Shown: in pieces, positions 1 through 20,106 of the stretch
Numbering within the stretch: the stretch's first letter is position 1
Layout: every line of letters starts with the position of its first letter
NCBI GenBank assembly: GCA_002269645.1
Contig: NIVC01003100.1
Coordinates: 96,566-119,424, forward strand
Length of the DNA: 22,859 nt
Direction: 5' to 3'
DNA from: Macrostomum lignano
Lineage: Eukaryota
Translations under genes and position numbers: made by a program
The notes under the pieces: model-generated
Told to the model about the DNA's origin: nothing
The model's database searches: none
Seen by the model: only the letters and a program-made list of their open reading frames with translations

Positions 1-256
1 TACGTTTTGGGGACCGGGTTAGGTGGACCGCAAAAAAACAGTTGGTTTAGTTAGACCTCTTTCTTTGTAGAAAATTTATGAGTTTCAAACTGTTATTTTG
101 GGCTAATTAAACAGAAATTCTCAGAAACAGAAGATAAAAAAGGTTTACGATTCCATTTTATTAAAAAAACCCTGGTTCAAACGAATTTATTTAGCTTTAC
201 TAAAACTATGGGTTAAACTGCATTAGTTACGAAGAAAAACAACGCACACTCAGGGA

Positions 257-664
257 TACAAGAAGTTGAAGCATTTTTAAAACGGCAACAGTTATTAAAA
301 TGGAAATTGTATCAAACAGATATAAGAAATTGAAGCATTTTGAAAAATAAATACCGAATCATTTCGCTTGCCTTAACGCAAAAGATTTAAAACCTAATTA
401 AACTAACTGCAAAGTCATTGAAACTAATTTAAGTCCGGAAGTACATTCTTAAACTACACGTTTAACAAACTTAGGATTGCATTAGTTAAAAAAGTCATAG
501 GGAGTACAAGAAGTTGAAGCATTTTTAAAAGGGCAACAGTTATTAAAATGGAAATTGTATAAAACAGATACAAGAAATTGAAGCATTTTTAAAACGGCGA
601 CAGTTATTAAAATGGAAATTGTATCAAACAGATACAAGAAATTGAAGCATTTTTAAAACGGCGA
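257..664. repeat. 64-bp repeat, two blocks (257-~345, 505-664)
   Basis: Unit TACAAGAA(A/G)TTGAAGCATTTTTAAAACGGC(A/G)ACAGTTATTAAAATGGAAATTGTATCAAACAGA starts at 257, 321, 505, 569, 633. Confidence 0.9.
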
Positions 665-902
665 CTCGCATTCCCCCCCCCCTACACGTTTTTTGCACCC
701 CAGCTTAAAAATTGGCGCCCCTCATACTCAGTTTGGCGTCCCAAACTTGGACCGCCCCCAAAAGCCATCGCTATGCTATCGATAGTGAACAGGTATTTCT
801 TGTCAGCTAAACTAATAGATGCTTTTTAATCTTAGTGTTAGCAATCATAAAGCGTTTAGTCACAAAATGCCGCGTTTTTTCATTTCATTGAAAAACTTCG
901 TT

Positions 903-908
903 TTTATT
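903..908 (-). terminator. Possible polyadenylation signal of the YR gene
   Basis: AATAAA on the minus strand ~150 nt after the YR stop codon; the region is AT-rich so it may be chance. Confidence 0.3.
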
Positions 909-1056
909 TTATGGATCGATCGTGACTGGAGTGCAGGTTCGCGTGCTTTTAGCTCTCCAAGGGCTGCAAAACCAGGTACTTTGCCGTCTTCGATCTTTTC
1001 TATCGCGCGGTTAATTGCCTCATTTTCGTCTTTGTTCCACGCAATGTGCTCCTGAA

Positions 1057-3802
1057 TTAGTTTTTTCTTGACTTCTGAAATGGATTGAAGTAACTGAAAT
1101 CAACTTTGGTTTTTTTCTTCCCCCCAGTTCCCATTTTGTCCTTACCTTCCGAACTAGGAGCGCTTTTGTCCTTCTGTGGGTCCTCTTGTCCGGGTCCTGG
1201 CTCGCTTTTGTCCTTCTGTGGGTCCTCTTGTCCGGGTCCTGGCTCGCTTTTGTCCTTCTGTGGGTCCTCTTGTCCGGGTCCTGGCTCGCTTTTGTCCTTC
1301 TGTGGGTCCTCTTGTCCATGTCCTGGCTCGCTTTTGTTATTAGTCGTTGTTGCTGTCGCACCCTTTGGCTTAGTCGTCCTTCGAATCCGCCTTTCGTTTG
1401 CTCTAGCTTTCTGCACTTTTCTGGTTTTTTTCGTCGGTTGGTAGTCTGAATCGTCTTTGTCTACTTCGCTTTCATATTCATCTGAGTCGAGCACAGCTAA
1501 TCGATTCTTCTTTTTTTCGACTTGCTTGATGGACAGGGGGGCTCCGCGAAAGTCGACAGAACCTTCGTGATAAATTGACTCGTCCTCAAATTCCTTAGCT
1601 TGGATACGAGCTCCATTATTCTCAGGAGGTGCTTGACTCTTTTGGTCACCACGTTTTAATTCTCGAGCCTGTGAGCCTATTGAGGCTTCCACATCACCGG
1701 ATTCGTTCAAATCATCTTTTTTTGCATCTGACTTATCGTCAATGTCATAGTCAATTTCGATGTCGTTAACATCAATCTCTTCGATAGTTTTGCCTTTAAG
1801 CTGGTCGAATCTACCGGCCTCGATAGCCAGAAGTAGCTTGCCTACTTTAGCAAGCTCAATAGTGTTTTCATGCAATCGATAGAAATTATGGTGAACATTA
1901 AGGCTATGTCCAAGATGGTTGGAGAGCCATCCGAGCTCATTTTCTCTCATTTCAAGGATCTGAGAGACAGTGGCAATGTATTTTCGAAGGTTGGTCGAAG
2001 ATAGACGAGCAGGGAACTGGAGCCCTTGACAACTGGAGACAACATTTGTGCGCGCAACGAATGGGGATATATATCCCAAACTTCCACTACTGCAGAATAC
2101 GTAAGGACTTGAAGCGTGGTGTCTTGTGCGAATGAGCTCATCGATAATTTCAGCAATCTCATTCGAAACTAGCAGAGGAACCGGTCGCTGTGCTCTCTTA
2201 CCTCGAACATTAACGATAGTCAACCGGTAAAGCATTTGCTTTTCTAATTCACTTAGCGCAGATAATGTTGTATCATCAACATCTTTGCATGATCTTGCTT
2301 TCTGCCACGCCGAAACTCGCAGCTTGAAGGGCTCAGACGCCCGGCGCTTGTTGAAAATAGACAAACGAATCGCAACATATTCGGCCACCTCTTTCCAGTA
2401 AGAAGGGCTGCTTTTTAGCTTTTCCGTGTCGATGTGGCTTAAATATTCGTTAATGTGCTTCGTGATTAACTGAATGTCGCTAGTTAACGGCAATGTCTGA
2501 CCCTTGTCAATTTTTCTTTCTTTCAAGGACAAAAGTGCAATCGAAGATATTTTACGGCTCCATGATGTTTCATACAGAGTGATGAAGTTGCGTCGCTCCT
2601 GAGCTACTTCGGGCATTTCGCATTTCAGGGCACGTACTAACGACAGTTCAGCAGCCAGCTTCAGAGAAAACCCGCACTTAAGTGCCATCGAAGGAATAGA
2701 AAAAGAATCGCAAATCTGAGCATCTTCTTGGGCCGTAAATTTCGCTACATTTCGAGTCGCCTCAACAACTAAATCAAATGATGATGGCTTCAGCAAATCG
2801 TCAAGACAAGCGCTGGGATCGCCCATAATTTCACGAGCTGACATAAGTAATCTCGACATTTCACGCATTTTCGCAGTTACAATTTTCTTTCCTGTCTTTC
2901 CGGATGTAAAACCTTCATAGGCGTAGTAGCCAAGTTCCATTATAAGCTTGTCTGATTGAGCTACTTTGCTACATGAGTCTACCTTCATTTTATTAATAAG
3001 TTCAATAAATTTGGACGGATATTTCGCCGGAAAGCATGATGCAAGGAGAAGGCAGCGTCCTGCACTGACAGCTTCTGTGCGCCTGTTCAAATCGCTGACA
3101 TTTACGACAAAGCGGCAGCGCTGAACATGCCTGCTTAACTCAGTTTTACGAAAAAATCCAAAACAGTGAATGCACGGCAAATACGAAACTTCATTATCTT
3201 TCATGTCCGAAGAACTTCTTTCGCGACACACAATGATTCCTCCCTCCTTCTCCTGGGTCATAACTTTTATGTTATGTTCGTAATCTCCTCGAAAGCGCAA
3301 GCGATCAAATTCCTGGTCATATTCTGAAAAAAATATGAACAGATAATTATTTTCAGACAAACTAAATACTACTATGAGGACCTACATAAAAAACTTATTT
3401 CAAAAACTTACTATCAGACTTAGGATTAAATGCGAGGGCGCGCTGTACACACATTTCCTTCGAGTGTGCCCGAATAAGATGCCTTCTGATCTTCGAAAAC
3501 ATTTCTCCGCAAAAGAGGCAGCAATGCCTCTTCTTCTCATGCTTAAGTTTCGCTTGGGACGGAACTAAATCATCAGACCAGACTTCCTCCAAATAATAAT
3601 CTTCATCACCATCTTCTTCCTCGAGTTCAGCGTCCTCAGGTAGTATACTCGTATTTGCAATGTCCCTTAAAGCTGAGTGCAACCTTCCACCAAGAATATC
3701 GTCTACTACCGTAAGATTTTTGTCCACAAACGAATCATCATCTACTAAATCAAAAGCAACGTCTATCCTTGCTTTGGTAGCATCGCCGTCTCTATCGCAA
3801 AC
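1057..3802 (-). CDS. Tyrosine recombinase (Crypton-type metazoan family) with N-terminal Zn-binding motifs; exons 3802-3412 and 3323-1057 (885 codons), first exon not adjacent
   Basis: YR catalytic-type motifs IFNKRRASE (R), RGKR (K), STNLRKY (xxxR), NHLGHS (H), NFYR (Y). Cys/His motifs CLFC..RHLIRAH and CIHC..RHVQRC. The 88-nt intron 3411-3324 (GTAAGT..TTTTTCAG) joins the two ORF-track ORFs in frame. Acceptor TTTATTTTTCAG|GTT at 3802. Confidence 0.85.
1161..1335 (-). repeat. 42-bp coding tandem repeat (~4 copies, DKSEPGPGQEDPQK) in the YR C-terminal tail
   Basis: Directly visible; period 42. Confidence 0.95.
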
Positions 3803-3879
3803 CTGAAAAATAAACAGCAAGTTACATAGCTTAGATATACTCATTAGCTCATTTTTCCTGAAAAGTCAATAAGTCAATT

Positions 3880-4055
3880 CTCTGAAGCACTACAACGCGA
3901 TAATCTAAGTCAAAACGTTTAGACACCCTTCATTTAGACAGTGCAGACGTTCTGATCTCATGGTGGACCAGCTCGCTTTCTAAGAATCTGTTCTGATTGC
4001 ATTCCAAGAAACGGAAACATTCCCGCACTAAACTTTCAAGACAGCTCTGAGAGCC
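3880..4055. other. Module B' (diverged B copy directly upstream of YR)
   Basis: 3941-4055 essentially identical to the B modules; 3880-3940 diverged (TTCTCTGAAGCAC versus TTCTCTACAGCAC). Confidence 0.85.
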
Positions 4056-4304
4056 AAAGCCCCAAACAGACTGAGAGAGCTGCTTTAGTTGTGTCTGTAG
4101 GTTAGGTGGACCACCTTCCAAGAGTCAAAGCCCCAAACAGACTGAGAGAGCTGCTTCAGTTGTGTCTGTAGGTTAGGTGGACCACCTTTTAAGAGTCAAA
4201 GCCCCAAACAGACTGAGAGAGCTGCTTCAGTTGTGTCTGTTCTGTAGGTTAGGTGGACCAGCTTCTCTACAGCAATTGAGTTGCAGCTAGCTACTTTGAG
4301 ATCA

Positions 4305-4544
4305 TCAAGCGAAACTCACTTTTCTGGACTCGGTGTCGACGGATTTGCCAGTAGACCGACGATTTTCACCAGGCGATGCGGCCTTCTTCGAGGCTGGAGT
4401 AGCGCCTGCATCCGCGGTAGCGTTGTGCGACTGAGCGCCTTCATCAAGGCGTGATGCAGAGCGCGAACGGCTTCGCGATTTCCGCCCTCTTTTTGAGGCA
4501 CCAGTGCGTTCGATTTGGCGGGAACGAAATTCGACCTCAGGCTC
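4305..4544 (-). CDS. Cassette A1 (alpha type): ATG-less terminal exon, 79 codons, basic RS-rich peptide ending RKVSFA
   Basis: Acceptor TTTTTATTCTCTAACTTCCTAG|GAG; open frame EPEVEFRSRQIERTGASKRGRKSRSRSRSASRLDEGAQ...SPGENRRSTGKSVDTESRKVSFA*. Same frame as the DBF4 C-terminus. Not in the ORF track because it lacks a start codon. Confidence 0.6.
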   Translation of the reverse strand, partial: EPEVEFRSRQIERTGASKRGRKSRSRSRSASRLDEGAQSHNATADAGATPASKKAASPGENRRSTGKSVDTESRKVSFA

Positions 4545-4961
4545 CTAGGAAGTTAGAGAATAAAAAGACAAGTCAAAGTCGGAAGCTTAAATTCAAAACC
4601 GCTGCCGTGTATCCGTGTGACCCTCAAACAGACTGAGAGAGCTGCTTCAGTTGTGTCTGTAGGTTAGGTGGACCACCTTATAAAAGTCAAAGCCCCAAAC
4701 AGACTGAGAGAGCTGCTTCAGTTGTGTCTGTAGGTTAGGTGGACCACCTTCCAAGAGTCAAAGCCCCAAACAGACTGAGAGAGCTGCTTCAGTTGTGTCT
4801 GTAGGTTAGGTGGACCACCTTTTAAGAGTCAAAGCCCCAAACAGACTGAGAGAGCTGCTTCAGTTGATGTCTGTAGGTTAGGTGGACCACCTTTTAAGAG
4901 TCAAAGCCCCAAACAGACTGAGAGAGCTGCTTCAGTTGTGTCTGTAGGTTAGGTGGACCAC

Positions 4962-5140
4962 CTTCTCTACAGCACTACTAGGCGATAATCTGAGTCGGAA
5001 TGCCTTGAGACCATTCATTTACACAGTGCAGACGTTCTGATCTCATGGTGGACCAGCTCGCTTTCTAAGAATCTGTTCTGATTGCATTCCAAGAAACGGA
5101 AACATTCCCGCACTAAACTTTCAAGACAGCTCTGAGAGCC
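4962..5140. other. Module B1 (non-coding or micro-exon module)
   Basis: Begins CTTCTCTACAGCAC; near-identical to 8288-8468, 11602-11782 and 12845-13024. Confidence 0.85.
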
Positions 5141-5815
5141 AAAGCCCCAAACAGACTGAGAGAGCTGCTTCAGTTGTGTCTGTAGGTTAGGTGGACCACC
5201 TTATAAAAGTCAAAGCCCCAAACAGACTGAGAGAGCTGCTTCAGTTGTGTCTGTAGGTTAGGTGGACCACCTTTTAAGAGTCAAAGCCCCAAACAGACTG
5301 AGAGAGCTGCTTCAGTTGTGTCTGTAGGTTAGGTGGACCACCTTATAAAAGTCAAAGCCCCAAACAGACTGAGAGAGCTGCTTCAGTTGTGTCTGTAGGT
5401 TAGGTGGACCACCTTATAAAAGTCAAAGCCCCAAACAGACTGAGAGAGCTGCTTCAGTTGTGTCTGTAGGTTAGGTGGACCACCTTATAAAAGTCAAAGC
5501 CCCAAACAGACTGAGAGAGCTGCTTCAGTTGTGTCTGTAGGTTAGGTGGACCACCTTATAAAAGTCAAAGCCCCAAACAGACTGAGAAAGCTGCTTCAGT
5601 TGTGTCTGTAGGTTAGGTTGACCACCTTTTAAGAGTTAAAGCCCCAAACAGACTGAGAGAGCTGCTTCAGTTGTGTCTGTAGGTTAGGTGGACCACCTTC
5701 CAAGAGTCAAAGCCCCAAACAGACTGAGAGAGCTGCTTCAGTTGCGTCTGTTCTGTAGGTTAGGTGGACCAGCTTCTCTACAGCAATTGAGTTGCAGCTA
5801 GCTACTTTGAGATCA

Positions 5816-6055
5816 TCAAGCGAAACTCACTTTTCTGGACTCGGTGTCGACGTATTTGCGAGTAGACCGACGATTTTCACCAGGCGATGCGGCCTTCTTC
5901 GAGGCTGGAGTAGCGCCTGCATCCGCGGTAGCGTTGTGCGACTGAGCGCCTTCATCAAGGCGTGATGCAGAGCGCGAACGGCTTCGCGATTTCCGCCCTC
6001 TTTTTGAGGCACCAGTGCGTTCGATTTGGCGGGAACGAAATTCGACCTCAGGCTC
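5816..6055 (-). CDS. Cassette A2 (alpha type) terminal exon
   Basis: Near-identical to A1; acceptor and frame intact. Confidence 0.6.
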   Translation of the reverse strand, partial: EPEVEFRSRQIERTGASKRGRKSRSRSRSASRLDEGAQSHNATADAGATPASKKAASPGENRRSTRKYVDTESRKVSFA

Positions 6056-6386
6056 CTAGGAAATTAGAGAATAAAAAGACAAGTCAAAGTCGGAAGCTTA
6101 AATTCAAAACCGCTGCCGTGTATCCGTGTGACCCTCAAACAGACTGAGAGAGCTGCTTCAGTTGTGTCTGTAGGTTAGGTGGACCACCTTTTAAGAGTCA
6201 AAGCCCCAAACAGACTGAGAAAGCTGCTTCAGTTGTTTCTGTAGGTTAGGTGGACCACCTTATAAAAGTCAAAGCCCCAAACAGACTGAGAGAGCTGCTT
6301 CAGTTGTGTCTGTAGTTTAGGTGGACCACCTTTTAAGAACTTCTCTACAGCAATTGAGTTGCATGCAGCTAGCTATTTTGAGATCA

Positions 6387-7430
6387 TTAAACGAAACTCA
6401 CTTTTTTGGACTCGGTGTCGACGTATTTGCGAGCAGACTGACGATTTTCGCCAAGCGATGCGGCTTGGCGTCTATCACCGTCATTTTGCTGAAATATGTT
6501 AGGTAGTGCTTTCGAATCCGGTTTTTTCGTGTCATGATGTGTCATAGGAGCGGTAGCCTTTTGAGTCGCTTCATTTAGGGCGCTGTCTAGCGTCGGAAGA
6601 GTTGAAATGATTTGGTCGATTTCAGTAAAATTTTTTTTATTCGAAACGAAATCTTGGTGCTTTTGGCTTAATGTTATGTGCTGATTAAAGTCGTCGTAGG
6701 CTTCGCGACAGTTTTCACACCGACCTTTCCGTTTTTCTTTGCCGTCAGGCTTTTGACGATTTTTTTCATCGTTATTATTAGCCCTTGGGTTTGCAAAAAT
6801 GTCGACGACATCAATGTTATCTTTGAAGATTGGTCTCAGCAAATGCTGGGCATCCGTAACAACAACGGCCGGTGGGGTCAAATTCCGATCTTCTTCGGCA
6901 AACCTCCCTGAAGAAATAGTTTTCTGGCACAGCTCGTGTTGAGAAACTTGATCGCGAATTCGATCTCGAAATATTGCCGGAGTGTAGACAGGTATTTGCA
7001 GCAAGCGAGCTTTCGTCAAAATATCTTCGAATGTTTTGACAATTCTGCATTGCGAACTCGAAGTTTGCGTAACGGCTCTCTGCTGCATGGTGAAACCCCT
7101 AGAAAACTCCGAAAAAGATTGTTTAGCTTCAATGGAGACAGCGGAATCGTCAGCGATGATTAAATCAACCTGGAAAAGCAAAAAATACGAGCCCATAGCT
7201 ACAAAAAATCTATCAACGTCTCTAATCTGCCCTATTAACAAGCAACAAACAAAAACAACGAATGCATTGCAAAAACTACACACCTCATTTGAAAAAAACG
7301 AAGCAACGCTTCCGCCATAATAGACGACGGCAGATTCCAGCTTCTTTTGTCGCTTTTGACTTTCGCCGTACAGAAAAAAAACTCGCTTCCCTCGAAGAGA
7401 ATCCAATGTAAACTGCTCGACCAAACAGCC
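6387..7430 (-). CDS. DBF4: Compact DBF4-like protein (Cdc7 kinase regulatory subunit); exons 7430-7284 and 7169-6387, 309 codons, no own ATG
   Basis: N/BRCT-like motif LRGKRVFFLY..LESAVVYYGGSVASFFSNE|VDLII, restored by removing a 114-nt GT..CAG intron. M motif LTPPAVVVTDAQHLLRPIFK. C-motif zinc finger KGRCENCREAYDDFNQHITLSQKHQDF..IDQII. Acceptor TTTTATTTTAGTTTCTACAG|GGC. Recognised from memory of DBF4 motifs. Confidence 0.85.
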   Translation of the reverse strand, partial: GCLVEQFTLDSLRGKRVFFLYGESQKRQKKLESAVVYYGGSVASFFSNEVCSFCNAFVVFVCCLLIGQIRDVDRFFVAMGSYFLLFQVDLIIADDSAVSIEAKQSFSEFSRGFTMQQRAVTQTSSSQCRIVKTFEDILTKARLLQIPVYTPAIFRDRIRDQVSQHELCQKTISSGRFAEEDRNLTPPAVVVTDAQHLLRPIFKDNIDVVDIFANPRANNNDEKNRQKPDGKEKRKGRCENCREAYDDFNQHITLSQKHQDFVSNKKNFTEIDQIISTLPTLDSALNEATQKATAPMTHHDTKKPDSKALPNIFQQNDGDRRQAASLGENRQSARKYVDTESKKVSFV

Positions 7431-7924
7431 CTGTAGAAACTAAAATAAAAAAAATTTCTCACATATTACTCCATTACGGAAACGCCTAAACAGTACATAA
7501 GTTTTGACTGTAGGTTAGGTGGACCACCTTCTAAGAGTCAAAGCCCCAAACAGACTGAGAGAGCTGCTTCAGTTGTGTCTGTAGGTTAGGTGGACACCTT
7601 ATAAGAGTCAAAGCCCCAAACAGACTGAGAGAGCTGCTTCAGTTGTGTCTGCAGGTTAGGTGGACCACCTTATAAAAGTCAAAGCCCCAAACAGACTGAG
7701 AGAGCTGCTTCAGTTGTATCTGTAGGTTAGGTGGACCACCTTCCAAGAGTCAAAGCCCCAAACAGACTGAGAAAGCTGCTTCAGATGTGTCTGTAGGTTA
7801 GGTGGACCACCTTCCAAGATTCAAAGCCCCAAACAGACTGAGAGAGCTGCTTCAGTTGTGTCTGTAGGTTAGGTGGACCAGCTTCTCTACAGCAATTGAG
7901 TTGCAGCTAGCTACTTTGAGATCA

Positions 7925-8155
7925 TCAAGCGAAACTCACTTTTCTGGACTCGGTGTCGACGGATTTGCCAGTAGACCGACGATTTTCACCAGGCGATGCG
8001 GCCTTCTTCGAGGCTGGAGTAGCGCCTGCATCCGCGGTAGCGTTGTGCGACTGAGCGCCTTCATCAAGGCGTGATGCAGACGCAGAGCGCGATTTCAACT
8101 TTTTCGAAGCCTCAGACTGGTCGAGCTCAGGAGAACGAAATTCGACCTCGGGCTC
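7925..8155 (-). CDS. Cassette A3 (beta type) terminal exon, 76 codons
   Basis: Different middle segment (EPEVEFRSPELDQSEASKKLKSRSASASR) but the same acceptor, frame and tail. Confidence 0.6.
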   Translation of the reverse strand, partial: EPEVEFRSPELDQSEASKKLKSRSASASRLDEGAQSHNATADAGATPASKKAASPGENRRSTGKSVDTESRKVSFA

Positions 8156-8287
8156 CTAGGAAGTTAGAGAATAAAAAGACAAGTCAACGTCGGAAGCTTA
8201 AATTCAAAACCGCTGCAGTGTATCCGTGTGACCCTCAAACAGACTGAGAGAGCTGCTTCAGTTGTGTCTGTAGGTTAGGTGGACCAC

Positions 8288-8468
8288 CTTCTCTACAGCA
8301 CTACTAGGCGATAATCTGAGTCGGAATGCCTAGAGACCATTCATTTACACAGTGCAGACATTCTGATCTCATGATGGACCAGCTCGCTTTCTAAGAATCT
8401 GTTCTGATTGCATTCCAAGAAACGGAAACATTCCCGCACTAAACTTTCAAGACAGCTCTGACAGCCAA
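8288..8468. other. Module B2
   Basis: Copy of B1. Confidence 0.85.
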
Positions 8469-8578
8469 GGCCCCAAACAGACTGAGAGAGCTGCTTCAGT
8501 TGTGTCTGTAGGTTAGGTGGACCACCTTTTAAGAGCTTCTCTACAGCAATTGAGTTGCAGCTAGCTACTTTGAGATCA

Positions 8579-8809
8579 TCAAGCGAAACTCACTTTTCTG
8601 GACTCGGTGTCGACGTATTTGCGAGTAGACCGACGATTTTCACCAGGCGATGCGGCCTTCTTCGAGGCTGGAGTAGCGCCTGCATCCGCGGTAGCGTTGT
8701 GCAACTGAGAGCCTTCATCAAGGCGTGATGCAGACGCAGAGCGCGATTTCAACTTTTTCGAAGCCTCAGACTGGTCGAGCTCAGGAGAACGAAATTCGAC
8801 CTCGGGCTC
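8579..8809 (-). CDS. Cassette A4 (beta type) terminal exon
   Basis: Frame and acceptor intact. Confidence 0.6.
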   Translation of the reverse strand, partial: EPEVEFRSPELDQSEASKKLKSRSASASRLDEGSQLHNATADAGATPASKKAASPGENRRSTRKYVDTESRKVSFA

Positions 8810-9420
8810 CTAGGAAGTTAGAGAATAAAAAGACAAGTCAACGTCGGAAGCTTAAATTCAAAACCGCTGCCGTGTATCCGTGTGACCCTCAAACAGACTG
8901 AGAGAGCTGCTTCAGTTGTGTCTGTAGGTTAGGTGGACCACCTTCCAAGAGTCAAAGCCCCAAACAGACTGAGAGAGCTGCTTCAGTTGTGTCTGTAGGT
9001 TAGGTGGACCACCTTCCAAGAGTCAAAGCCCCAAACAGACTGAGAGAGCTGCTTTAGTTGTGTCTGTAGGTTAGGTGGACCACCTTTTAAGAGTCAAAGC
9101 CCCAAACAGACTGAGAGAGCTGCTTCAGTTGTGTCTGTAGGTTAGGTGGACCACCGTATAAAAGTCAAAGCCCCAAACAGACTGAGAAAGCTGCTTCAGT
9201 TGTGTCTGTAGGTTAGGTGGACCACCTTCCAAGAGTCAAAGCCCCAAACAGACTGAGAAAGCTGCTTCAGTTGTGTCTGTAGGTTAGGTGGACCACCTTA
9301 TAAGAGTCAAAGCCCCAAACAGACTGAGAGAGCTGCTTCAGTTGTGTCTGTAGGTTAGGTGGACCACCTTTTAAGAGCTTCTCTACAGCAATTGAGTTGC
9401 AGCTAGCTACTTTGAGATCA

Positions 9421-9651
9421 TCAAGCGAAACTCACTTTTCTGGACTCGGTGTCGACGTATTTGCGAGTAGACCGACGATTTTCACCAGGCGATGCGGCCT
9501 TCTTCGAGGCTGGAGTAGCGCCTGCATCCGCGGTAGCGTTGTGCAACTGAGAGCCTTCATCAAGGCGTGATGCAGACGCAGAGCGCGATTTCGACTTTTT
9601 CGAAGCGTCAGACTGGTCGAGCTCAGGAGAATGAAATTCGAACTCAGGCTC
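9421..9651 (-). CDS. Cassette A5 (beta type) terminal exon
   Basis: Frame and acceptor intact despite several substitutions. Confidence 0.6.
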   Translation of the reverse strand, partial: EPEFEFHSPELDQSDASKKSKSRSASASRLDEGSQLHNATADAGATPASKKAASPGENRRSTRKYVDTESRKVSFA

Positions 9652-9922
9652 CTAGGATGTTAGAGAATAAAAAGACAAGTCAACGTCGGAAGCTTAAATT
9701 CAAAACCGCTGCCGTGTATCCGTGTGACTAGGGATGTCGATTCCCCGGGGAATATTCTTATCGGGGACCCGGGGAATTTACTGTCATTCCCGGGGACCCC
9801 GGGGAAAATTAAAAATAAGTTAAAAACGGCGAATAACTTTGGCTTAGATCTTAAATGGCATTTTAAACTTTGATTTTAGCTTTAGACTACATGTTCAAGG
9901 CGCAAGGGTAAAAACTAAACAA

Positions 9923-10260
9923 TCTCTACCTATAAAAATGAAAACTCTGTCTGCGTGTGTGTCTGTGTACAAATTACTTTGCTATGGACTCCCAAGTCCC
10001 AAACCGCTCAACCAAATTACGATAACTTTTGCACCCGCCCTAAATTTACTACGGAGAATGTCTTAGGCTACCTTAAAATTTCCTAAACTCAAGTCTTCCT
10101 ACCTAAAAGTGCAAAAACTGCTCAAAATGCGCGATTTTTTACTAAATCCTCCATAGCGCCGCTCCACTTCTACCGATCCTTTCAACCGTGTAAAATTTCA
10201 AGTCTCAAAGTTAATCCTGAAAGGCGCTGTGCACTTTTAAAATTAACTGTTTTTTCAGCG
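9923..10260 (+). mobile_element. Possible non-autonomous Helitron-like fragment nested in the hAT; right end not defined
   Basis: A|TCTCTACCTATAAAAATGAAAAC followed by a (TG/TCTG) tract and CCGCTCAACCAAATTACGATAACTTTTGCAC resembles animal Helitron 5' ends from memory. No 3' hairpin/CTRR end found. Confidence 0.35.
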
Positions 10261-10944
10261 AGGCAACCACCCCAACCTCCGCCCGCCTGCCTCTCTTTCC
10301 CGATCTGGGCAAAGGAGTGTAAATAGGTTTAAAATGACTAACTTTCGGCTGTCATAAGCTTGCTCCACGTGAAGCGATTGACTTCAAATTTGACGCAATT
10401 CTTTATTGACTCATTCTCTATCTAAATGTAAAGTCTCAACTCTGTATCTCAATCAGGACAGAAACTGTAAGCATGTGAAGTTTGTCTGCTTTTTCTGTTG
10501 TTTGTGCCGCTCACTCATTCCACCAGCCCAGACCCCCAGACGAAGGGTCAGGCGATTGGGCTTAATGTACATAGCGAATGTACAGTGTTTTGGAATAACT
10601 TTTTAATAGCCTTCTCTGTACCCGCGAGTGGAGAGGCGCAGAGAGGAGAGACAGTTTAGCCAGAGATTCAAAACACTGTCCTCTGTATAGACAAGTCTTC
10701 AGGCTCAGTTATAACAGTAGATGGCAAATCAAGAGTCAAGACAACGTGGGATGGTTTGTAAAAATAGCGAAAAATTAATGAATAACTGATTACAATGCAA
10801 TCCTACTAAATTAGTTAGTTACAGCATGAAGCTTTTAACATTAAAATTCGCATAAGATCACTTTAAAATTTAAATGGCTCCTAAGAAATGCCTATATCCC
10901 TTGGTTGTAGTAGGGATGTCGACCCCGGGGAGCTTGTGTTTATT

Positions 10945-11064
10945 TAAAACTGTATTTGACAACGTGGCATCATCAAATCGTGCGTGCACCTTTGTCAGAA
11001 GGAGTCCAGACTGTGGTGTGGAGGCGGAAAATGCATGCTCAGCAGCTACGCTCGTGGGAGGATA
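10945..11064 (-). pseudogene. Remnant of hAT transposase C-terminal dimerisation domain
   Basis: YPPTSVAAEHAFSAS..GLLLTKVHARFDDATLSNTVL resembles the hAT PxTSxxxERxFS..GLxxTKxRxRL motif. Confidence 0.75.
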
Positions 11065-11601
11065 ATTAATGAATGAGACCGTTTTTATAATCAAAATTTT
11101 TATTTCTAGCAGACATTGTCCTTGTCTAATAGGGAGCATTTTGTTATTGTATGACACCCCCATGCGTCCGCAGGACGCAGCGCTGTGCCTGCGTCAAATT
11201 CCGTCAAGCCGTCAACGCAGACCAACACAGTAGTCAGTAAAGCTTCTTTTTCCTGACGGGTTTTTAGGTGAAATTTGCTTGATTGAAGGACTCGTAGTGA
11301 AAAAACATTCAAACGTGTGTTGCGTTTGAAATTTTACATTGAGATAAGCAGTTATGCGGTAAGAAAAGCATAGACAGAGTTTCAATCAGCTCTCTGTAAA
11401 TTATTTTCTTATTTTAATGGCAAAAATTAGGTTAAAAATGCATTTTTCTCCCGGGGTCCCCGGTTCAATTCCCCGGGGAATATTCCCCGACAAGCTCCCC
11501 GGGGCCCCGGGGAGCACTCCCCGGGGTCGACATCCCTACGTGTGACCCTCAAACAGACTGAGAGAGCTGCTCCAGTTGTGTTTGTAGGTTAGGTGGACCA
11601 C

Positions 11602-11782
11602 CTTCTCTACAGCACTACTAGGCGATAATCTGAGTCGGAATGCCTAGAGACCATTCATTTACACAGTGCAGACATTCTGATCTCATGGTGGACCAGCTCG
11701 CTTTCTAAGAATCTGTTCTGATTGCATTCCAAGAAACGGAAACATTCCCGCACTAAACTTTCAAGACAGCTCTGAGAGCCAA
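11602..11782. other. Module B3
   Basis: Copy of B1. Confidence 0.85.
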
Positions 11783-12003
11783 GGCCCCAAACAGACTGAG
11801 AAAGCTGCTTCAGTTGTGTCTGTAGGTTAGGTGGACCACCTTCCAAGATTCAAAGCCCCAAACAGACTGAGAGAGCTGCTTCAGTTGTGTCTGTAGGTTA
11901 GGTGGACCACCTTATAAAAGTCAAAGCCCCAAACAGACTGAGAAAGCTGCTTCAGTTGTGTCTGTAGGTTAGGTGGACCACCTTCCAAGATTCAAAGCCC
12001 CAA

Positions 12004-12301
12004 CATACATGCGCAACCTCCAAAATTCGGTCGGCCGTGCGACTTAGTTTTAACAAAAATGCGACGTAGTTTTTGGCCAAAAATGCGACTTACATGGAAA
12101 GAAACCCTAAAGCAAAATTAACGCAACTTCGGGTAAACGGCAGGAGTAACTATGACTGTCTTATTGAGCCAAAATGCCTCGTCAGCTACTTAGTACTACT
12201 ACTTCGGTGTTTTTTCGGGTGGGCATATTTGCGACTTCCTTGGTTGGCCGCCAAATCGGTCGGCCGGATCGGCCGACTCGGCCAACTGTTGCGCATGTAT
12301 G
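12004..12301. mobile_element. 298-bp MITE, probably hAT-type, inserted in one 71-bp repeat
   Basis: 14-bp TIR CATACATGCGCAAC / GTTGCGCATGTATG; 8-bp target duplication AGCCCCAA at 11996-12003 and 12302-12309. Confidence 0.93.
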
Positions 12302-12472
12302 AGCCCCAAACAGACTGAGAGAGCTGCTTCAGATGTGTCTGTAGGTTAGGTGGACCACCTTCCAAGATTCAAAGCCCCAAACAGACTGAGAGAGCTGCTT
12401 CAGTTGTGTCTGTAGGTTAGGTGGACCAGCTTCTCTACAGCAATTGAGTTGCAGCTAGCTACTTTGAGATCA

Positions 12473-12712
12473 TCAAGCGAAACTCACTTTTCTGGACTCG
12501 GTGTCGACGGATTTGCCAGTAGACCGACGATTTTCACCAGGCGATGCGGCCTTCTTCGAGGCTGGAGTAGCGCCTGCATCCGCGGTAGCGTTGTGCGACT
12601 GAGCGCCTTCATCAAGGCGTGATGCAGAGCGCGAACGGCTTCGCGATTTCCGCCCTCTTTTTGAGGCACCAGTGCGTTCGATTTGGCGGGAACGAAATTC
12701 GACCTCAGGCTC
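12473..12712 (-). CDS. Cassette A6 (alpha type) terminal exon
   Basis: Near-identical to A1. Confidence 0.6.
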   Translation of the reverse strand, partial: EPEVEFRSRQIERTGASKRGRKSRSRSRSASRLDEGAQSHNATADAGATPASKKAASPGENRRSTGKSVDTESRKVSFA

Positions 12713-12844
12713 CTAGGAAGTTAGAGAATAAAAAGACAAGTCAAAGTCGGAAGCTTAAATTCAAAACCGCTGCAGTGTATCCGTGTGACCCTCAAACAGA
12801 CTGAGAGAGCTGCTTCAGTTGTGTTTGTAGGTTAGGTGGACCAC

Positions 12845-13024
12845 CTTCTCTACAGCACTACTAGGCGATAATCTGAGTCGGAATGCCTAGAGGCCATTCA
12901 TTTACACAGTGCAGACATTCTGATCTCATGGTGGACCAGCTCGCTTTCTAAGAATCTGTTCTGATTGCATTCCAAGAAACGTAAGCATTCCTGCACTAAA
13001 CTTTCAAGACAGCTCTGTGAGCCA
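12845..13024. other. Module B4
   Basis: Slightly more diverged copy of B1. Confidence 0.85.
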
Positions 13025-13104
13025 AAGCCCCAAACAGACTGAGAGAGCTGCTTCAGTTGTGTCTGTAGGTTAGATAGGCCTTGCAATTAGCTATTTTGAG
13101 ATCA

Positions 13105-13278
13105 TCAAACGAAACTCACTTTTCTGGACTCGGTGTCGATGGTTTTGCGAGCAGACTGTCGGTTTTCACCAGGCGATGCGGCCTTCTTCGATTTTGCAGT
13201 GGCTTTTTGCGTCGCAGTTTTTTTAGGTTTTACCTTAGGCTTAGGCTTGGCGTCCTTTTTGTTTTTTTTTCGGGTCAT
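13105..13278 (-). CDS. Module H: short Lys/Ala/Pro-rich ORF (57 aa) with the shared tail
   Basis: MTRKKNKKDAKPKPKVKPKKTATQKATAKSKKAASPGENRQSARKTIDTESRKVSFV*; a candidate acceptor at 13307 is out of frame as assembled. Confidence 0.45.
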   Translation of the reverse strand: MTRKKNKKDAKPKPKVKPKKTATQKATAKSKKAASPGENRQSARKTIDTESRKVSFV

Positions 13279-13466
13279 TGTATCTTGCTTGGCACAATAA
13301 ATTTATCTATAGATGAAACTTAGAGTATGGAAAATAATGTTAGACCTAATAAGTGTGAATAGAATCAGTTCTAATTTATAAAACTGTCTGTGTGTGGTCT
13401 AACTACGCCATGGTTTACGGGGACCACCCGCTTAGACATTATATATCCCTCTCTCTACAGTCTTAC

Positions 13467-13511
13467 CTTCAGAACCCTTGCGGGTTTCCTATTGGCTGAG
13501 GTCGGTCCCAT
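13467..13511 (-). CDS. Putative shared first coding exon (MGPTSANRKPARVLK)
   Basis: Good start context CAACG-ATG-G, exactly 15 codons, then a strong phase-0 donor AAG|GTAAGA. TATAAT-like sequence ~40 nt upstream (13551-13556). Confidence 0.5.
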
Positions 13512-14378
13512 CGTTGGGGTTGATCTTTCCTCCTAAGTGTTAACCAGCCAATTATAGAAAGGGAGGTCTGTCTGTCTGTCTGTTCCAACCCTATACTCCT
13601 GCACATGTGTTTACGTGGACCAAACAGACAGTTAGTGTTAGGCTGACTGTTAATGCGTTCTTAGTTTTACTGGGACCGCAATCAAGTCGATCTTTTGCTA
13701 GAGATTCAGAGACCCAATTTCTAGCTAAAAGGCCCTTCTTAATTGCGTCCTCTTGATTTTGCATGTACATGTATGAATGGCCCTTTTCAATTAGGTAAAT
13801 TGCATCTTCAACTTTGCACTTAAAAGGCTGCAGCTTAGGATCTTCTTCTTCAAGATATCCCATAGTGTTTGCGATAGAGTTGGCAAGCACTTAATTTATG
13901 AAGTTGCTATTAATTTTTTCTTGTGTAATGGTAGAGCCTCAGAAATTTTCATTTACACAGTGTGGCTATCAAGGACCACTGGGAGTTCTTGAGAAGTCAT
14001 TGAAGAATATTGTTTAAGCTTCACTTAAATATCTTTCTTGTCTCGGAGTCTTTATCGCTTGATCTGGTTAGTAAATTGGATTTCTTTACATTGGTGTCTT
14101 ACTCTGTGAGTCTCTGCTCAGAGTACGATACCGGAATTGCTGGAACTGAGCTAATTAAATGGAGTTTAAAGTTTACTATATAAAATTCATTTCGCATACG
14201 AGGTTGTCAGAATTTTAAATTAACCTGCGTACCTACTTGAATGTCAAAGAATTTTAACGCATATTGTTTTAAGGCCAGTGGCGGTCATAATATGATGTTA
14301 ACATAGCCATTTGTTCGTAAGGTAATGATATGTAAAAAATTCAGTTTTGCATCGAATCTATGCTTAATAACTGCTATA

Positions 14379-14720
14379 CACAAACAGACACAAACAGACA
14401 CAAACAGACACAAACAGACGATTTTCGAAAAATTTTCTGAAATTTTTCGGTTTACGTGGACCAGACTCGCTCGGTTTAGGTAGACCAGGCTGGAGGTCCA
14501 GCTAAACTGAAATGCGAATAACTTTGGAAAAAACCATGCTAGACATTCCAAAATTGCTAGAGCCCTTCTTGACCCGCCTGACATTAATTTGAGATCCTCA
14601 TCAACGTCTTAACCCCACCAGAGACAAAATTATTTGGTGGTCCACCTAAGTGGTCTACCTACACCGGGTGGTCCAGCTAACGAGGCTACTGAACTTCCAA
14701 AAAGTCCACGTAAACACACA
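14379..14720. repeat. Cluster of repeat-derived motifs: 4x CAAACAGACA plus forward and inverted TTA(C/G)(G/C)T(G/A)GACCA boxes
   Basis: Forward boxes at ~14450-14490; inverted boxes at ~14497, 14636-14650, 14652-14662, 14669-14681, 14704-14718. Confidence 0.75.
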
Positions 14721-14734
14721 GACAGTAGAACAGG

Positions 14735-14735
14735 C

Positions 14736-14788
<53 letters not shown>

Positions 14789-14789
14789 G
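14735..14789. repeat. (GACA)n microsatellite
   Basis: Directly visible. Confidence 0.97.
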
Positions 14790-15212: not shown

Positions 15213-15304
15213 GTGCCAAAGCGGCTACCCTGTGAGCGATTGATTTCTATTCGATTCCAGCATGCCTGAGTAGCTTCAATAGAAAGAGCATTGAGTTTTC
15301 AGTG

Positions 15305-15905
15305 TTTCCTATGGAAACTACTGTGCTTCCTATGGAAACTACTGTGCTTCCTATGGAAACTACTGTGCTTCCTATGGAAACTACTGTGCTTCCTATGGAA
15401 ACTACTGTGCTTCCTATGGAAACTACTGTGCTTCCTATGGAAACTACTGTGCTTCCTATGGAAACTACTGTGCTTCCTATGGAAACTACTGTGCTTCCTA
15501 TGGAAACTACTGTGCTTCCTATGGAAACTACTGTGCTTCCTATGGAAACTACTGTGCTTCCTATGGAAACTACTGTGCTTCCTATGGAAACTACTGTGCT
15601 TCCTATGGAAACTACTGTGCTTCCTATGGAAACTACTGTGCTTCCTATGGAAACTACTGTGCTTCCTATGGAAACTACTGTGCTTCCTATGGAAACTACT
15701 GTGCTTCCTATGGAAACTACTGTGCTTCCTATGGAAACTACTGTGCTTCCTATGGAAACTACTGTGCTTCCTATGGAAACTACTGTGCTTCCTATGGAAA
15801 CTATTGTGCTTCCTATGGAAACTACTGTACTTCCTATGGAAACTACTGTACTTCCTACGGAAACTACTGTGCTTCCTATGGAAACTGATGTGCTTCCTAT
15901 GGAAA
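15305..15905. repeat. 21-bp intronic minisatellite (CTATGGAAACTACTGTGCTTC), ~28 copies
   Basis: Directly visible. Confidence 0.97.
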
Positions 15906-15968
15906 AACCCCTGCATCCTATGGCCTGGATTTGGGCCATTTCTAGTCACGTGACGATTGGTTAATCAG

Positions 15969-16505: not shown

Positions 16506-16552
16506 GTGAGCTGCTCTGGCGTGCGGCCTTTGTTTGATCTTTATCTATGCAG

Positions 16553-17350: not shown

Positions 17351-17372
17351 TTAACCAGTCCCAATCCCTCAG

Positions 17373-17726: not shown

Positions 17727-18049
17727 TTGATTCTCCTGATCATTTTATAGCTCTAGTTTTACTACGCCCGCCCCCGCATTCCGCACTAATCACTCTGATG
17801 ATGATTAACGCGCTCAGGGTCTGAATTTGTTGCTCTATTTTTATCATTTAACAATCCCCACTGATGGTTGATGATTCCCGCCTGTACGCTTTGTTGGCTA
17901 ACCATATCATTATTCATCTAAGAAGTCGCTGCTCTTACTGATGGCTGATTGCCTAATTTTAACCGTCTATTGAGGTTCAATCGGTTTATTAGGTTGTTGC
18001 CTTCAGCTAACATTCGATATTCACTACTATGTGTCTGGTGTTGTTTTCT

Positions 18050-19347: not shown

Positions 19348-19348
<1 letters not shown>

Positions 19349-19429
<81 letters not shown>

Positions 19430-20026: not shown

Positions 20027-20106
20027 CAGGCAGTAACTAATGCTTCTCTATTTTTTATGTTGGTTGGTCAGCAATGCTCGGATAGTGACACGGCCGCCTT
20101 ACTCAC

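What the first reader, a model, noticed from the sequence alone, without database searches (positions are those of the whole stretch)
1057..13520. Tyrosine recombinase linked to a repeat-delimited gene-cassette array: an integron- or shufflon-like system in a eukaryote
Seen: a spliced YR gene next to ~43 direct 71-bp repeats separating modules in irregular order (+ strand: YR, B', R3, A-alpha, R5, B, R9, A-alpha, R3, DBF4, R5, A-beta, R, B, R, A-beta, R7, A-beta, [hAT], R, B, R5, A-alpha, R, B, R, H). All coding modules are on the YR strand, and every A, B and D module starts with the same junction CTTCTCTACAGCA next to the repeat's GGTGGACCA(C/G) end. Known: YRs excise and integrate circles between direct repeats. 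Inference: the YR may excise, reorder or acquire cassettes at R sites. I know of no described Crypton-type element with such an array, but I could not search.
Basis: partly seen in the sequence, partly recalled or inferred. Interest (0 to 1): 0.92.

Follow-up and report, generated by a model that had tools for sequence, protein, structure and literature searches.

The report
Recombinase transposon with hypervariable exon-repeat array
The window holds most of a ~16-kb mobile element of the flatworm Macrostomum lignano whose only enzyme is a tyrosine recombinase; its introns are filled with tandem copies of the element's own end-sequence, between which coding exons have been amplified. It is therefore a new kind of eukaryotic recombinase transposon rather than an integron.

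Summary
There are 43 direct 71-bp repeats (R), the module order is as described, and CTTCTCTACAGCA lies at all 11 junctions.

Corrections:
- All coding is on the minus strand.
- The A modules are phase-0 exons of 216 or 225 nt with splice sites. RNA-seq-derived gene models splice them onto the recombinase.
- B is non-coding intron DNA.
- R lies in the introns.

The organism is Macrostomum lignano. The recombinase has a tyrosine-recombinase fold and catalytic residues. It has no Pfam model and no detectable similarity to published Crypton cores.

New findings:
- Every R unit carries a 14-nt site, GGTTTAnnTGGACC.
- The same site clusters at both ends of the locus, in imperfect terminal inverted repeats that abut (TGTC)n.
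- It has 0 hits in 63 kb of flanking DNA.
- A paralogous element (50% protein identity) has homologous ends and the same site layout. It has an unrelated 83-85-bp intronic repeat that carries the same site between a duplicated exon.
- That paralog occurs at three loci with unrelated flanks and 3, 10 or 25 exon copies.
- Two copies of the main element also differ in array content and in their left flank.

Verdict: this is a mobile recombinase element with a hypervariable internal array. The link between the recombinase and R is supported. The integron and shufflon readings are not.

The parts
16..57 (+). Two right-subterminal copies of the 14-nt site (16-29, 44-57). The right terminal inverted repeat itself lies about 120-190 bp beyond window position 1 (L001 18149-18222).
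860..1074 (-). Recombinase exon 3: SANT/Myb-like C-terminus and stop codon. It is conserved with the paralog's C-terminus.
1146..3323 (-). Recombinase exon 2: second zinc finger, tyrosine-recombinase core (R339/R340, K388, R459, H485, Y494 in the 767-aa ORF numbering) and an acidic tail with a 42-bp x4 coding repeat.
3412..3802 (-). Recombinase exon 1: acidic region plus a C2H2-like finger. It starts at a phase-0 acceptor (tttttcag|GTTTGC).
3861..4062 (.). B': the intron segment upstream of recombinase exon 1 and the source of the B copies.
4063..4264 (+). R array, 2.8 units
4320..4544 (-). A-alpha exon (225 nt, phase 0-0)
4625..4964 (+). R array, 4.8 units
4975..5147 (.). B copy (non-coding)
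5148..5775 (+). R array, 8.8 units
5831..6055 (-). A-alpha exon (225 nt)
6136..6338 (+). R array, 2.9 units
6402..7430 (-). DBF4-like part: exon D1 7284-7430 and exon D2 6402-7169, both phase 0. D2 carries a zf-DBF domain. The D2 tail and its donor are homologous to the H and A exon ends.
7500..7884 (+). R array, 5.4 units
7940..8155 (-). A-beta exon (216 nt)
8236..8535 (+). R part-unit (8236-8290), B copy (8301-8473), R part-unit (8474-8535)
8594..8809 (-). A-beta exon (216 nt)
8890..9377 (+). R array, 6.9 units
9436..9651 (-). A-beta exon (216 nt)
9730..11538 (.). Secondary insertion INS1: inverted ends TAGGGATGTCGA..., 8-bp target duplication CGTGTGAC (hAT-like, non-autonomous). Present in both copies of the element.
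11550..12000 (+). R part-unit (11550-11604), B copy (11615-11787), R array of 3 units (11788-12000)
12001..12306 (.). Secondary insertion INS2 inside an R array: inverted ends CATACATGCGCAAC, 8-bp duplication AGCCCCAA. Present only in the window copy.
12307..12432 (+). R array, 1.8 units
12488..12712 (-). A-alpha exon (225 nt). The same position holds A-beta in L001.
12793..13073 (+). R part-unit (12793-12847), B copy (12858-13030), R part-unit (13031-13073)
13120..13278 (-). H: exon 1 with the ATG (159 nt of coding sequence, phase 0, GTGAGT donor)
13412..13621 (+). Two promoter-proximal copies of the site (13412-13425, 13608-13621), at -147 and -340 from the ATG. Their positions are conserved in the paralog (-124 and -312).
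14449..14508 (.). Left subterminal sites, including an inverted pair with an 8-bp spacer (14473-14508: GGTTTAGGTAGACC AGGCTGGA GGTCCAGCTAAACT). The pair is conserved in position and spacing in the paralog and is a candidate core site.
14639..14729 (-). Left terminal inverted repeat (TTCTACTGTCTGTGTGTTTACGTGGACT...) with three to four sites in the opposite orientation to all the others.
14736..14789 (-). (TGTC)13 abutting the left end. Homology with the second copy (L001) stops here.

Best explanation
The window holds most of a ~16-kb DNA transposon of Macrostomum lignano.

The gene. Its only enzyme is a zinc-finger / tyrosine-recombinase / SANT-like protein. This protein is the 3' part of one long spliced gene on the minus strand. 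The exon order is H, four A exons, the DBF4-like exons, two A exons, then the recombinase exons. There are 12 exons, and every junction upstream of the recombinase is phase 0. Together they make a 1726-codon open reading frame.

The ends. The element ends in imperfect inverted repeats with clusters of a 14-nt site, GGTTTAnnTGGACC. Both ends abut (TGTC)n.

Mobility (inferred). The element's protein binds these sites. The element then moves, Crypton-like, by recombination across the TGTC repeats into other (TGTC)n microsatellites.

The array. The 71-bp R unit is a copy of the right-end site plus neighbouring sequence. It has expanded as a minisatellite in the introns. Exchange between R arrays has duplicated and deleted what lies between them. 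I take this exchange to be homology-driven and unequal, possibly helped by protein bound at the sites. The pieces between R arrays are an in-frame exon (A, derived from the 3' part of exon 1) and a non-coding intron piece (B, derived from B'). The result is a hypervariable array of exon plus repeat, not a set of acquired gene cassettes. DBF4 in this element and a chromodomain in the paralog are N-terminal domains captured into the element's gene.

Shown: the exon structure, the ends, the multiple insertion sites, the site sharing and the array variation.
Inferred: protein binding to the site, the circle and TGTC crossover, and any role of the recombinase in array change.
For: Exons and transcript:
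- Splice sites, phases and one open 5181-nt reading frame.
- The GenBank model P0001 joins the D2 tail, four A-alpha exons and the recombinase. Models of that assembly are RNA-seq derived (PMC5730564).

Recombinase:
- R, K, R, H and Y are conserved in 25 homologues.
- The AF2 core is confident. The top Foldseek hits are XerA and the integron integrase, probability about 1.0.

Ends:
- Left and right ends are inverted copies of each other.
- The ends of the two paralogous elements align only at the sites.
- An inverted pair with an 8-bp spacer sits at the same distance from the left end in both.

Mobility:
- The paralog sits on three contigs at 97-99% identity, and no flank shares homology with any other. 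Homology stops in the (TGTC)n.
- The window and L001 have unrelated left flanks.
- No other long ORF lies in the paralog element.

Site specificity:
- 52 hits in the window against 1.3 expected.
- 0 hits at two or fewer mismatches in 63,038 bp of nine flanks.
- The site is in every R unit and in every unit of the paralog's unrelated 83-85-bp repeat, always in right-end orientation.
- The site holds 4 of 127 variant counts among 59 R units, against about 23 expected by length.

Array dynamics:
- Different maps in the window and L001.
- 3, 10 and 25 open module exons in the paralog copies.
- A MITE with a target duplication occurs only in the window copy, so the copies are distinct DNA.
Against: - No protein-DNA binding, circle junction or empty site has been seen.
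- Inverted ends with subterminal repeats are classically a feature of DDE transposons, not of Cryptons.
- The right end of the main element is outside the window, so only one flank of that element could be compared.
- The background for the site is 63 kb, not the genome.
- R units have a single site without an inverted partner, so they are poor candidates for a complete recombination core.
- It is unknown whether the long H-to-recombinase reading frame is ever made as one protein. The database models are partial or messy.
- DBF4 may be the host's only copy, which would sit oddly inside a mobile element.
Confidence: 0.6

Rival explanations
1. One reading: an integron-like system. The recombinase excises circles between two R sites and re-inserts them at other R sites, so that it reorders, amplifies and acquires cassettes.
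For: - R carries the element's terminal site.
- Arrays differ in number and order between copies.
- A exons are mosaics of alpha/beta and GKS/RKY patches. The first A is alpha in the window but beta in L001.
- The R-B junction is a 31-nt imperfect palindrome, z = -3.1.
- An active Crypton recombinase causes rearrangements between its copies and target-like sites in Chlamydomonas (PMC9977147).
Against: - Cassettes are exons or intron pieces of local origin.
- R alone has no unusual fold, z about 0, and no inverted partner site.
- Junctions lie at more than one position in R.
- Module and first-R-unit blocks are duplicated together, as in unequal exchange.
- No foreign cassette is seen apart from DBF4, whose upstream junction with R lies elsewhere in the unit (position 33) than those of the A and B modules.
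Confidence: 0.13
2. A passive satellite. R and the exon array are an ordinary intronic minisatellite or macrosatellite that evolves by slippage and unequal crossing-over. The recombinase next to it is irrelevant. The site is in R only because R happened to arise from subterminal sequence.
For: - Tandem and simple repeats make up 15% of this genome (PMC5730564). The window and all the loci are full of other minisatellites.
- All differences between copies are whole-unit and in register.
Against: - Two unrelated repeat units (71 bp and 83-85 bp) in two diverged elements both carry the site in the same orientation. The chance of this is roughly 3e-4 per unit, by my own estimate.
- None of the other minisatellites in 63 kb of flanks carries the site.
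- The site is the least variable part of R.
Confidence: 0.17
3. The unit is mobilised in trans by an unidentified DDE transposase that recognises the inverted ends and subterminal repeats. The recombinase-like gene is cargo or a domesticated gene.
For: - Inverted ends with clustered subterminal sites resemble CACTA, hAT and P-type ends.
- A 4- or 8-bp target duplication would be hidden inside (TGTC)n.
Against: - The recombinase gene is the only long ORF shared by the two diverged elements.
- Its catalytic residues are intact.
- Flanking direct repeats of one short sequence on both sides fit the recombinase-type integration model (PMC3212892; PMC9977147).
Confidence: 0.08
4. Assembly artefact: the arrays and their differences come from mis-assembly of repeats.
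For: Long arrays of near-identical 1.2-kb units are hard to assemble. The assembly is known to be redundant.
Against: - The architecture recurs on five independent sequences.
- Units differ by 1-4% from one another.
- A MITE with its target duplication distinguishes the window from L001.
- Arrays next to DBF4 are identical in both copies.
Confidence: 0.02

Closest known systems
Crypton DNA transposons (tyrosine-recombinase-only elements; Goodwin 2003, Kojima & Jurka 2011)
   Same: - No reverse transcriptase.
- A single recombinase gene, sometimes with introns and fused host domains.
- The same short sequence on both sides of the element, here (TGTC)n, as expected if integration is a crossover between an element sequence and an identical target.
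- Prone to fusion with host exons.
   Different: - Described Cryptons have no inverted ends and only 4-6-bp direct repeats. This element has about 25-70-bp inverted ends with site clusters.
- The family profile does not match published CryptonA, I, F or S cores (scores at or below 0 bits) or Pfam DUF3504.
- The protein has N-terminal zinc fingers and a C-terminal SANT-like domain.
- Internal site-bearing arrays are not described for Cryptons.
Bacterial integrons (IntI, attI, attC cassettes)
   Same: - A tyrosine recombinase sits next to a one-orientation array of modules separated by repeats that carry a recombinase-type site.
- Array content varies between copies.
- The integron integrase is among the best structural matches.
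   Different: - Modules are exons or intron pieces of one spliced gene, not promoterless genes.
- The repeats are tandem arrays without an attC-like hairpin.
- There is no attI/Pc arrangement.
- All modules are of local origin.
Transposons whose end or subterminal binding-site repeats expand into internal tandem arrays (Drosophila foldback and Galileo elements, CACTA/En-Spm subterminal repeats). This comparison rests on my own knowledge.
   Same: Short protein-binding motifs of the ends are multiplied into variable tandem arrays inside the element.
   Different: Those elements use DDE transposases, and their arrays are not interleaved with amplified coding exons.
Starship elements of fungi (tyrosine-recombinase 'captain' plus cargo)
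   Same: - Recombinase-mobilised and cargo-carrying.
- Some have inverted ends.
- They move through a circular intermediate, according to a 2026 preprint abstract.
   Different: - Fungal, and tens to hundreds of kb long.
- They use a DUF3435 recombinase placed at the 5' end.
- Cargo consists of separate genes rather than exons spliced to the recombinase.
Crypton-derived host genes (ZMYM2-4, QRICH1, KCTD1, WOC)
   Same: A recombinase-derived domain is fused by splicing to unrelated N-terminal domains. Compare DBF4 or the chromodomain here.
   Different: Those genes have lost the catalytic residues and their mobility. Here the residues are intact and the copies sit at different loci.

Membership tests
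Integron | Each cassette ends in an attC site, an imperfect palindrome that folds as single-stranded DNA | tested here: not met
   The R unit folded as DNA on either strand gives z = -0.04 and -0.49 against shuffles. Only the R-B junction is palindromic, z = -3.1.
Integron | Cassettes are independent, usually promoterless genes | tested here: not met
   A is an internal phase-0 exon with acceptor and donor sites. B has stops in all six frames. Transcript-based models splice A to the recombinase.
Integron | An IntI-type integrase with attI and the Pc promoter next to the first cassette | tested here: inconclusive
   The fold matches tyrosine recombinases in general, including IntI (2a3v, E about 2e-2). 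No IntI-specific feature was tested. The recombinase is at the 3' end of the same transcript as the array.
Shufflon | Inverted repeat sites that allow segments to invert | tested here: not met
   All 43 R copies are on one strand. All internal sites in five element copies have one orientation.
Tyrosine recombinase superfamily | Catalytic R-K-(H)-R-H/W-Y residues and the two-domain fold | tested here: met
   R339/R340 in 25 of 25 sequences, K388 in 23 of 25, R459 in 22, H485 in 21, Y494 in 22 of 22 ungapped. Foldseek hits are XerA and IntI with probability 0.99-1.00. The first His of HxxR is not conserved. The Pfam Phage_integrase model matches only 1 of 25 members, at E = 0.02.
Crypton | A recombinase-encoding DNA element without reverse transcriptase | tested here: met
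   No other long ORF in the element. No RT domain was found.
Crypton | The recombinase groups with the CryptonF, S, A or I clades, or with DUF3504 | tested here: not met
   The family HMM against 12 published Crypton cores gives best scores at or below 0.1 bits. No DUF3504 hit. The cores came from a machine-read PDF and are short, so distant kinship is not excluded.
Crypton | No inverted ends; short (4-6 bp) direct repeats at both termini that equal the target | tested here: inconclusive
   Inverted ends are present, which differs from Cryptons. Direct (TGTC)n on both sides of all copies fits the direct-repeat/target idea.
Mobile element (any) | Near-identical copies at different loci with sharp common boundaries | tested here: met
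   The paralog element has three contigs, 97-99% identity inside, no flank homology, and boundaries in (TGTC)n next to the inverted ends. The main element has unrelated left flanks; its right flank was not available.
DDE-type TIR transposon | A DDE transposase and a fixed-length target-site duplication | tested here: inconclusive
   No second long ORF. A duplication cannot be read inside (TGTC)n. A transposase acting in trans could not be searched for genome-wide.
Tandem array evolving by unequal exchange | Head-to-tail units; copies differ by whole units in register; concerted evolution and mosaicism | tested here: met
   Unit periods differ by multiples of about 83 bp in the paralog. A exons are mosaic.

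The most novel reading that the evidence does not exclude
The element's recombinase really does use the intronic R sites, which are copies of its own end. With them it excises, amplifies and re-inserts exon-plus-repeat units and captures host domains (DBF4, chromodomain) into its own gene. That would be an intron-embedded eukaryotic counterpart of cassette recombination that diversifies the recombinase's N-terminal region.
Probability: 0.15. Interest if true: 0.92.

Novelty: new variant of a known kind. Interest (0 to 1): 0.7.

Why it matters
- It gives exact ends, a candidate binding site, a candidate core site and a candidate target, (TGTC)n, for a very large animal protein family. That family has about 15,700 clusters at 50% identity, occurs in molluscs, echinoderms, fishes and insects, and has no Pfam model or name.
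- As far as I could search, recombinase-only DNA transposons in animals have no described terminal structure.
- The element multiplies its own end-site inside its introns and co-amplifies in-frame exons up to eight-fold between near-identical copies. This is a concrete case for how transposon-borne sites drive exon duplication, domain capture and gene-structure instability.
- M. lignano is a transgenic laboratory model. Binding, circle formation and array instability are therefore directly testable there.

Tried and rejected
1. attC-like hairpins in R: the fold energies are ordinary.
2. Naming the protein by sequence:
   - Pfam gave nothing for the window protein and only stray weak hits among 25 homologues.
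   - A profile against PDB sequences gave only zinc-finger noise.
   - The structure search did work.
3. Crypton membership by profile against the published cores: no significant match.
4. Homology between the 71-bp and the 83-85-bp repeat units: none beyond the 14-nt site.
5. Terminal repeats in homologues from other organisms:
   - The apparent 170-bp direct repeats in L003 are copies of a dispersed short repeat that occurs three times in the locus.
   - L007 and L008 share a block that starts in LINE-like sequence.
   - No inverted ends were found in L003, L006 or L007.
6. Sampling random M. lignano DNA through hAT relatives of INS1: the search returned nothing and used the last protein search. 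The background therefore rests on nine flanks, 63 kb in all.
7. RNA genes in the window: none in Rfam and no tRNA.
8. Small ORFs in the left subterminal region (13591-13890, 14285-14584): no family match.
9. Telling recombinase-catalysed from homology-driven exchange using the repeat-variant strings: both predict the same in-register products.

Full report
**1. Observation**

- Tandem Repeats Finder reports eleven arrays of period 71 between 4050 and 12433.
- BLAST with one unit finds 43 copies or part-copies between 4063 and 13073, all on the + strand.
- CTTCTCTACAGCA occurs 11 times, each time directly after an R end.

The description is therefore accurate.

**2. What the modules are**

All long ORFs in 1-14500 that matter lie on the minus strand.

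- On that strand each A module is an exon. It has the acceptor ...cttcctag|GAGCC and the donor AAAAG|GTGAGT.
- A exons are 225 nt (alpha) or 216 nt (beta) long. They are open only in frame 0.
- H is a first exon with an ATG at 13278 and the same donor.
- The DBF4-like part has two phase-0 exons, 7430-7284 and 7169-6402. It carries a zf-DBF domain, E = 5e-16.
- The first recombinase exon starts at a phase-0 acceptor at 3802.
- Joining all 12 exons gives one open frame of 5181 nt, or 1726 codons.
- B has stop codons in all six frames in every copy. It is a copy of B', the intron piece just upstream of the first recombinase exon.
- R therefore fills the introns.
- H, A and the end of D2 share a block of about 130 bp that includes the donor. 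A is therefore of local origin.

**3. Organism and transcripts**

- The recombinase ORF is 99-100% identical to Macrostomum lignano proteins.
- The GenBank model P0001 is the D2 tail, four A-alpha exons and the recombinase.
- GenBank models of that assembly were built from RNA-seq with StringTie, TACO and TBONE (PMC5730564). Splicing of A exons onto the recombinase therefore has transcript support.
- A WormBase-derived model (P0035) strings together H, three A-beta exons, DBF4 and the recombinase, though messily.
- No other DBF4 of this species was retrieved. The search method would miss a diverged one.

**4. The enzyme**

- Pfam finds nothing.
- Twenty-five homologues, from bivalves, beetles, an M. 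lignano paralog and metagenomes, share four boxes: NKRR, GKR, LRKY and HLGHxxxVHxxFY.
- The candidate catalytic R, K, R, H and Y are nearly invariant.
- An AlphaFold model built on that alignment is confident in the core.
- Its best PDB matches are the XerA recombinase and the Vibrio integron integrase, probability about 1.0, E from 5e-3 to 3e-2.
- The family also has N-terminal C2H2-like fingers and a C-terminal SANT/Myb-like box.
- A profile search of 1.84 billion representatives finds 15,676 clusters at E <= 1e-3. The best ones are unnamed proteins of a sea slug, a sea cucumber, teleosts, a weevil and a mayfly.
- The family profile does not match published CryptonA, I, F or S cores.

**5. 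The key site**

- Every R unit contains AGGTTAGGTGGACC.
- Searching GGTTTAGGTGGACC with up to 3 mismatches gives 52 hits in the window against 1.3 expected.
- Ten of those hits lie outside the arrays. Two are at 16-57, downstream of the recombinase. Eight are at 13412-14716, upstream of H.
- The outermost four of the upstream eight have the opposite orientation to the rest.

**6. A second copy, a paralog and their ends**

- L001 (NIVC01000029.1) is a second copy of this element. It has the same layout and shows the right end, which lies just outside the window.
- L002 holds a paralog with 50% protein identity and an N-terminal chromodomain.
- Its gene has three arrays of an 83-85-bp repeat between copies of a 390-nt exon.
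- That repeat is not alignable to R. Even so, every unit carries GGTTTAGCTGGACC in the same orientation relative to the gene.
- The site also clusters just upstream and downstream of that gene.
- The ends of the two elements align with each other only at these sites.
- Left and right ends are inverted copies: ACTGTCTGTGTGTTTAsswGGAC in the main element and TAGTGTATGTGTGkTTrCrTAGAC in the paralog.
- An inverted pair of sites with an 8-bp spacer lies about 220-260 bp from the left end in both.
- Two sites lie 120-340 bp upstream of the start codon in both.
- (TGTC)n abuts both ends in the same orientation.

**7. Mobility**

- The paralog's 90% cluster has three annotated genes on three contigs.
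- The three loci (L002, L010, L009) are 97-99% identical inside the element.
- Homology ends in the flanking (TGTC)n.
- None of the flanks matches any other flank.
- The window and L001 likewise have unrelated sequence beyond the left (TGTC)n.
- The recombinase gene is the only long ORF in the paralog element.
- In 63,038 bp of nine flanks the site has no match at two or fewer mismatches.

These are therefore mobile units with defined ends, and the site is specific to them.

**8. Array dynamics**

Maps in gene orientation (r is a part-unit of R, Rn is n units):

- Window: H r B r Aa R1.8 [INS2] R3 B r [INS1] Ab R6.9 Ab r B r Ab R5.4 D R2.9 Aa R8.8 B R4.8 Aa R2.8 B' YR.
- L001: H r B r Ab R2.8 B r [INS1] Ab R3.9 B r Ab R5.8 B r Ab R5.4 D R2.9 Aa R4.8 Aa R6.8 B r Aa R4.8 Aa R5.8 B R1.8 B' YR.

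Other points:

- Coding each R unit by its variable linker shows that a module and the first units that follow it are copied together. The arrays next to DBF4 are identical in both copies.
- A exons are mosaics of two variable patches.
- INS2, with its own 8-bp target duplication, is present only in the window. The two copies are therefore different DNA, not assembly noise.
- The paralog has 3, 10 and 25 copies of its module exon, all open. Unit periods differ by multiples of about 83 bp.
- In L009 the promoter and chromodomain exons are also duplicated into the array.

**9. Reading**

What is shown:
- A spliced recombinase gene.
- Exons amplified together with an intronic repeat.
- A repeat that carries the element's end-site.
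- Conserved inverted ends next to (TGTC)n.
- Several insertion sites.
- Strongly variable arrays.

What is inferred:
- The element's protein binds the 14-nt site.
- Movement is by a Crypton-like crossover in TGTC repeats. The short-direct-repeat model is in PMC3212892. Observed Crypton activity and Crypton-linked rearrangements are in PMC9977147.
- The arrays grow and shrink by exchange between R arrays.

Whether that exchange is catalysed by the recombinase cannot be told from sequence, because both routes give in-register products.

Against a true cassette system:
- R lacks an attC-like fold and an inverted partner site.
- Junctions lie at two positions in R.
- B is non-coding.
- A and B are local sequence.

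Against a purely passive satellite:
- Two unrelated repeats in two diverged elements carry the same site in the same orientation.
- None of the many other minisatellites nearby does.
- The site is the least variable part of R: 4 of 127 variant counts, against about 23 expected by length.

**10. Comparison with known systems**

- Described Cryptons have no inverted ends and only 4-6-bp direct repeats.
- Some fungal Starships have inverted ends and cargo, but a different recombinase.
- Integrons and shufflons fail their defining tests here.
- From my own knowledge, expansion of end-site repeats into internal arrays is known from DDE elements (foldback, Galileo, CACTA), but not interleaved with coding exons.

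I therefore file this as a new variant of the recombinase DNA-transposon kind.

**11. Limits**

- The right end of the main element is outside the window.
- The site background is 63 kb, not the genome.
- There is no read-level, expression-level or biochemical evidence.
- Homologues from other species gave no clear ends.
- There are no RNA genes in the window.

Noticed in passing
window 9730-11538: A 1.8-kb insertion inside the array. It has inverted ends TAGGGATGTCGAyyCCSGGGG, an 8-bp target duplication CGTGTGAC and a degenerate hAT-like ORF remnant (10870-11163, minus strand). It is present in both copies of the element, so it is older than their split.
   Followed up: partly
window 12001-12306: A 306-bp MITE-like insertion inside an R array. 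It has inverted ends CATACATGCGCAAC / GTTGCGCATGTATG and an 8-bp duplication AGCCCCAA. It is absent from L001, so it is a recent insertion and shows that the two copies are distinct.
   Followed up: partly
window 1161-1337: A 42-bp tandem repeat (4.2 copies, 98% identical) inside the recombinase coding sequence. It encodes KSEPGPGQEDPQKD repeats in the disordered tail.
   Followed up: no
window 255-665: A 64-bp tandem repeat (505-665), with further copies at about 255-330, downstream of the recombinase stop and inside the element's right part. It does not carry the 14-nt site.
   Followed up: no
window 15302-22856: The flank outside the element is almost wholly satellites: 21 bp x29, 40 bp x18.5, 36/76 bp x23, (CTGA)169, 26 bp x61 and 21 bp x39. 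None carries the site.
   Followed up: partly
window 13591-13890 (minus strand): A 99-aa ORF with a protein-like sequence in the left subterminal region, between two copies of the site. It has no Pfam match and its role is unknown.
   Followed up: partly
L009 10500-43300 (NIVC01001364.1): In this copy of the paralog element the unit of exon plus 83-bp array is present 25 times (about 33 kb). A block holding the promoter and chromodomain exons (L002 9372-10912) is duplicated into the array at 15423-16961.
   Followed up: yes
L002 1331-26587: The annotation places the paralog element inside a large Ank/ARM-repeat gene in the same orientation. In L009 a different Ank-repeat gene starts about 200 bp after the element's right (TGTC)n. 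The flanks share no DNA homology.
   Followed up: partly
window 4946-4976, 8272-8302, 11586-11616, 12829-12859: Each R-to-B junction forms a 31-nt imperfect palindrome, CTGTAGGTTAGGTGGACCACCTTCTCTACAG, centred in the 14-nt site. As DNA it folds better than 199 of 200 shuffles. Its meaning is unknown.
   Followed up: partly
proteins P0036-P0177: The recombinase family is very large (15,676 clusters at 50% identity; 4,197 at E <= 1e-30). It is spread over molluscs, echinoderms, teleosts and insects, and every named member is 'uncharacterized' or mis-named. It has no Pfam model.
   Followed up: partly
L003 8817-8890, 9485-9658, 14830-14994: A GC-rich dispersed repeat (GGCTGGGGCTCTGCCCCAGACCCCGCTGGGGGAGCTTACAGCGCTCCCCCAGACCCCCTAGCTGG...) flanks an intronless homologue in a metagenome contig. 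It first looked like terminal direct repeats, but it occurs three times in the locus.
   Followed up: partly
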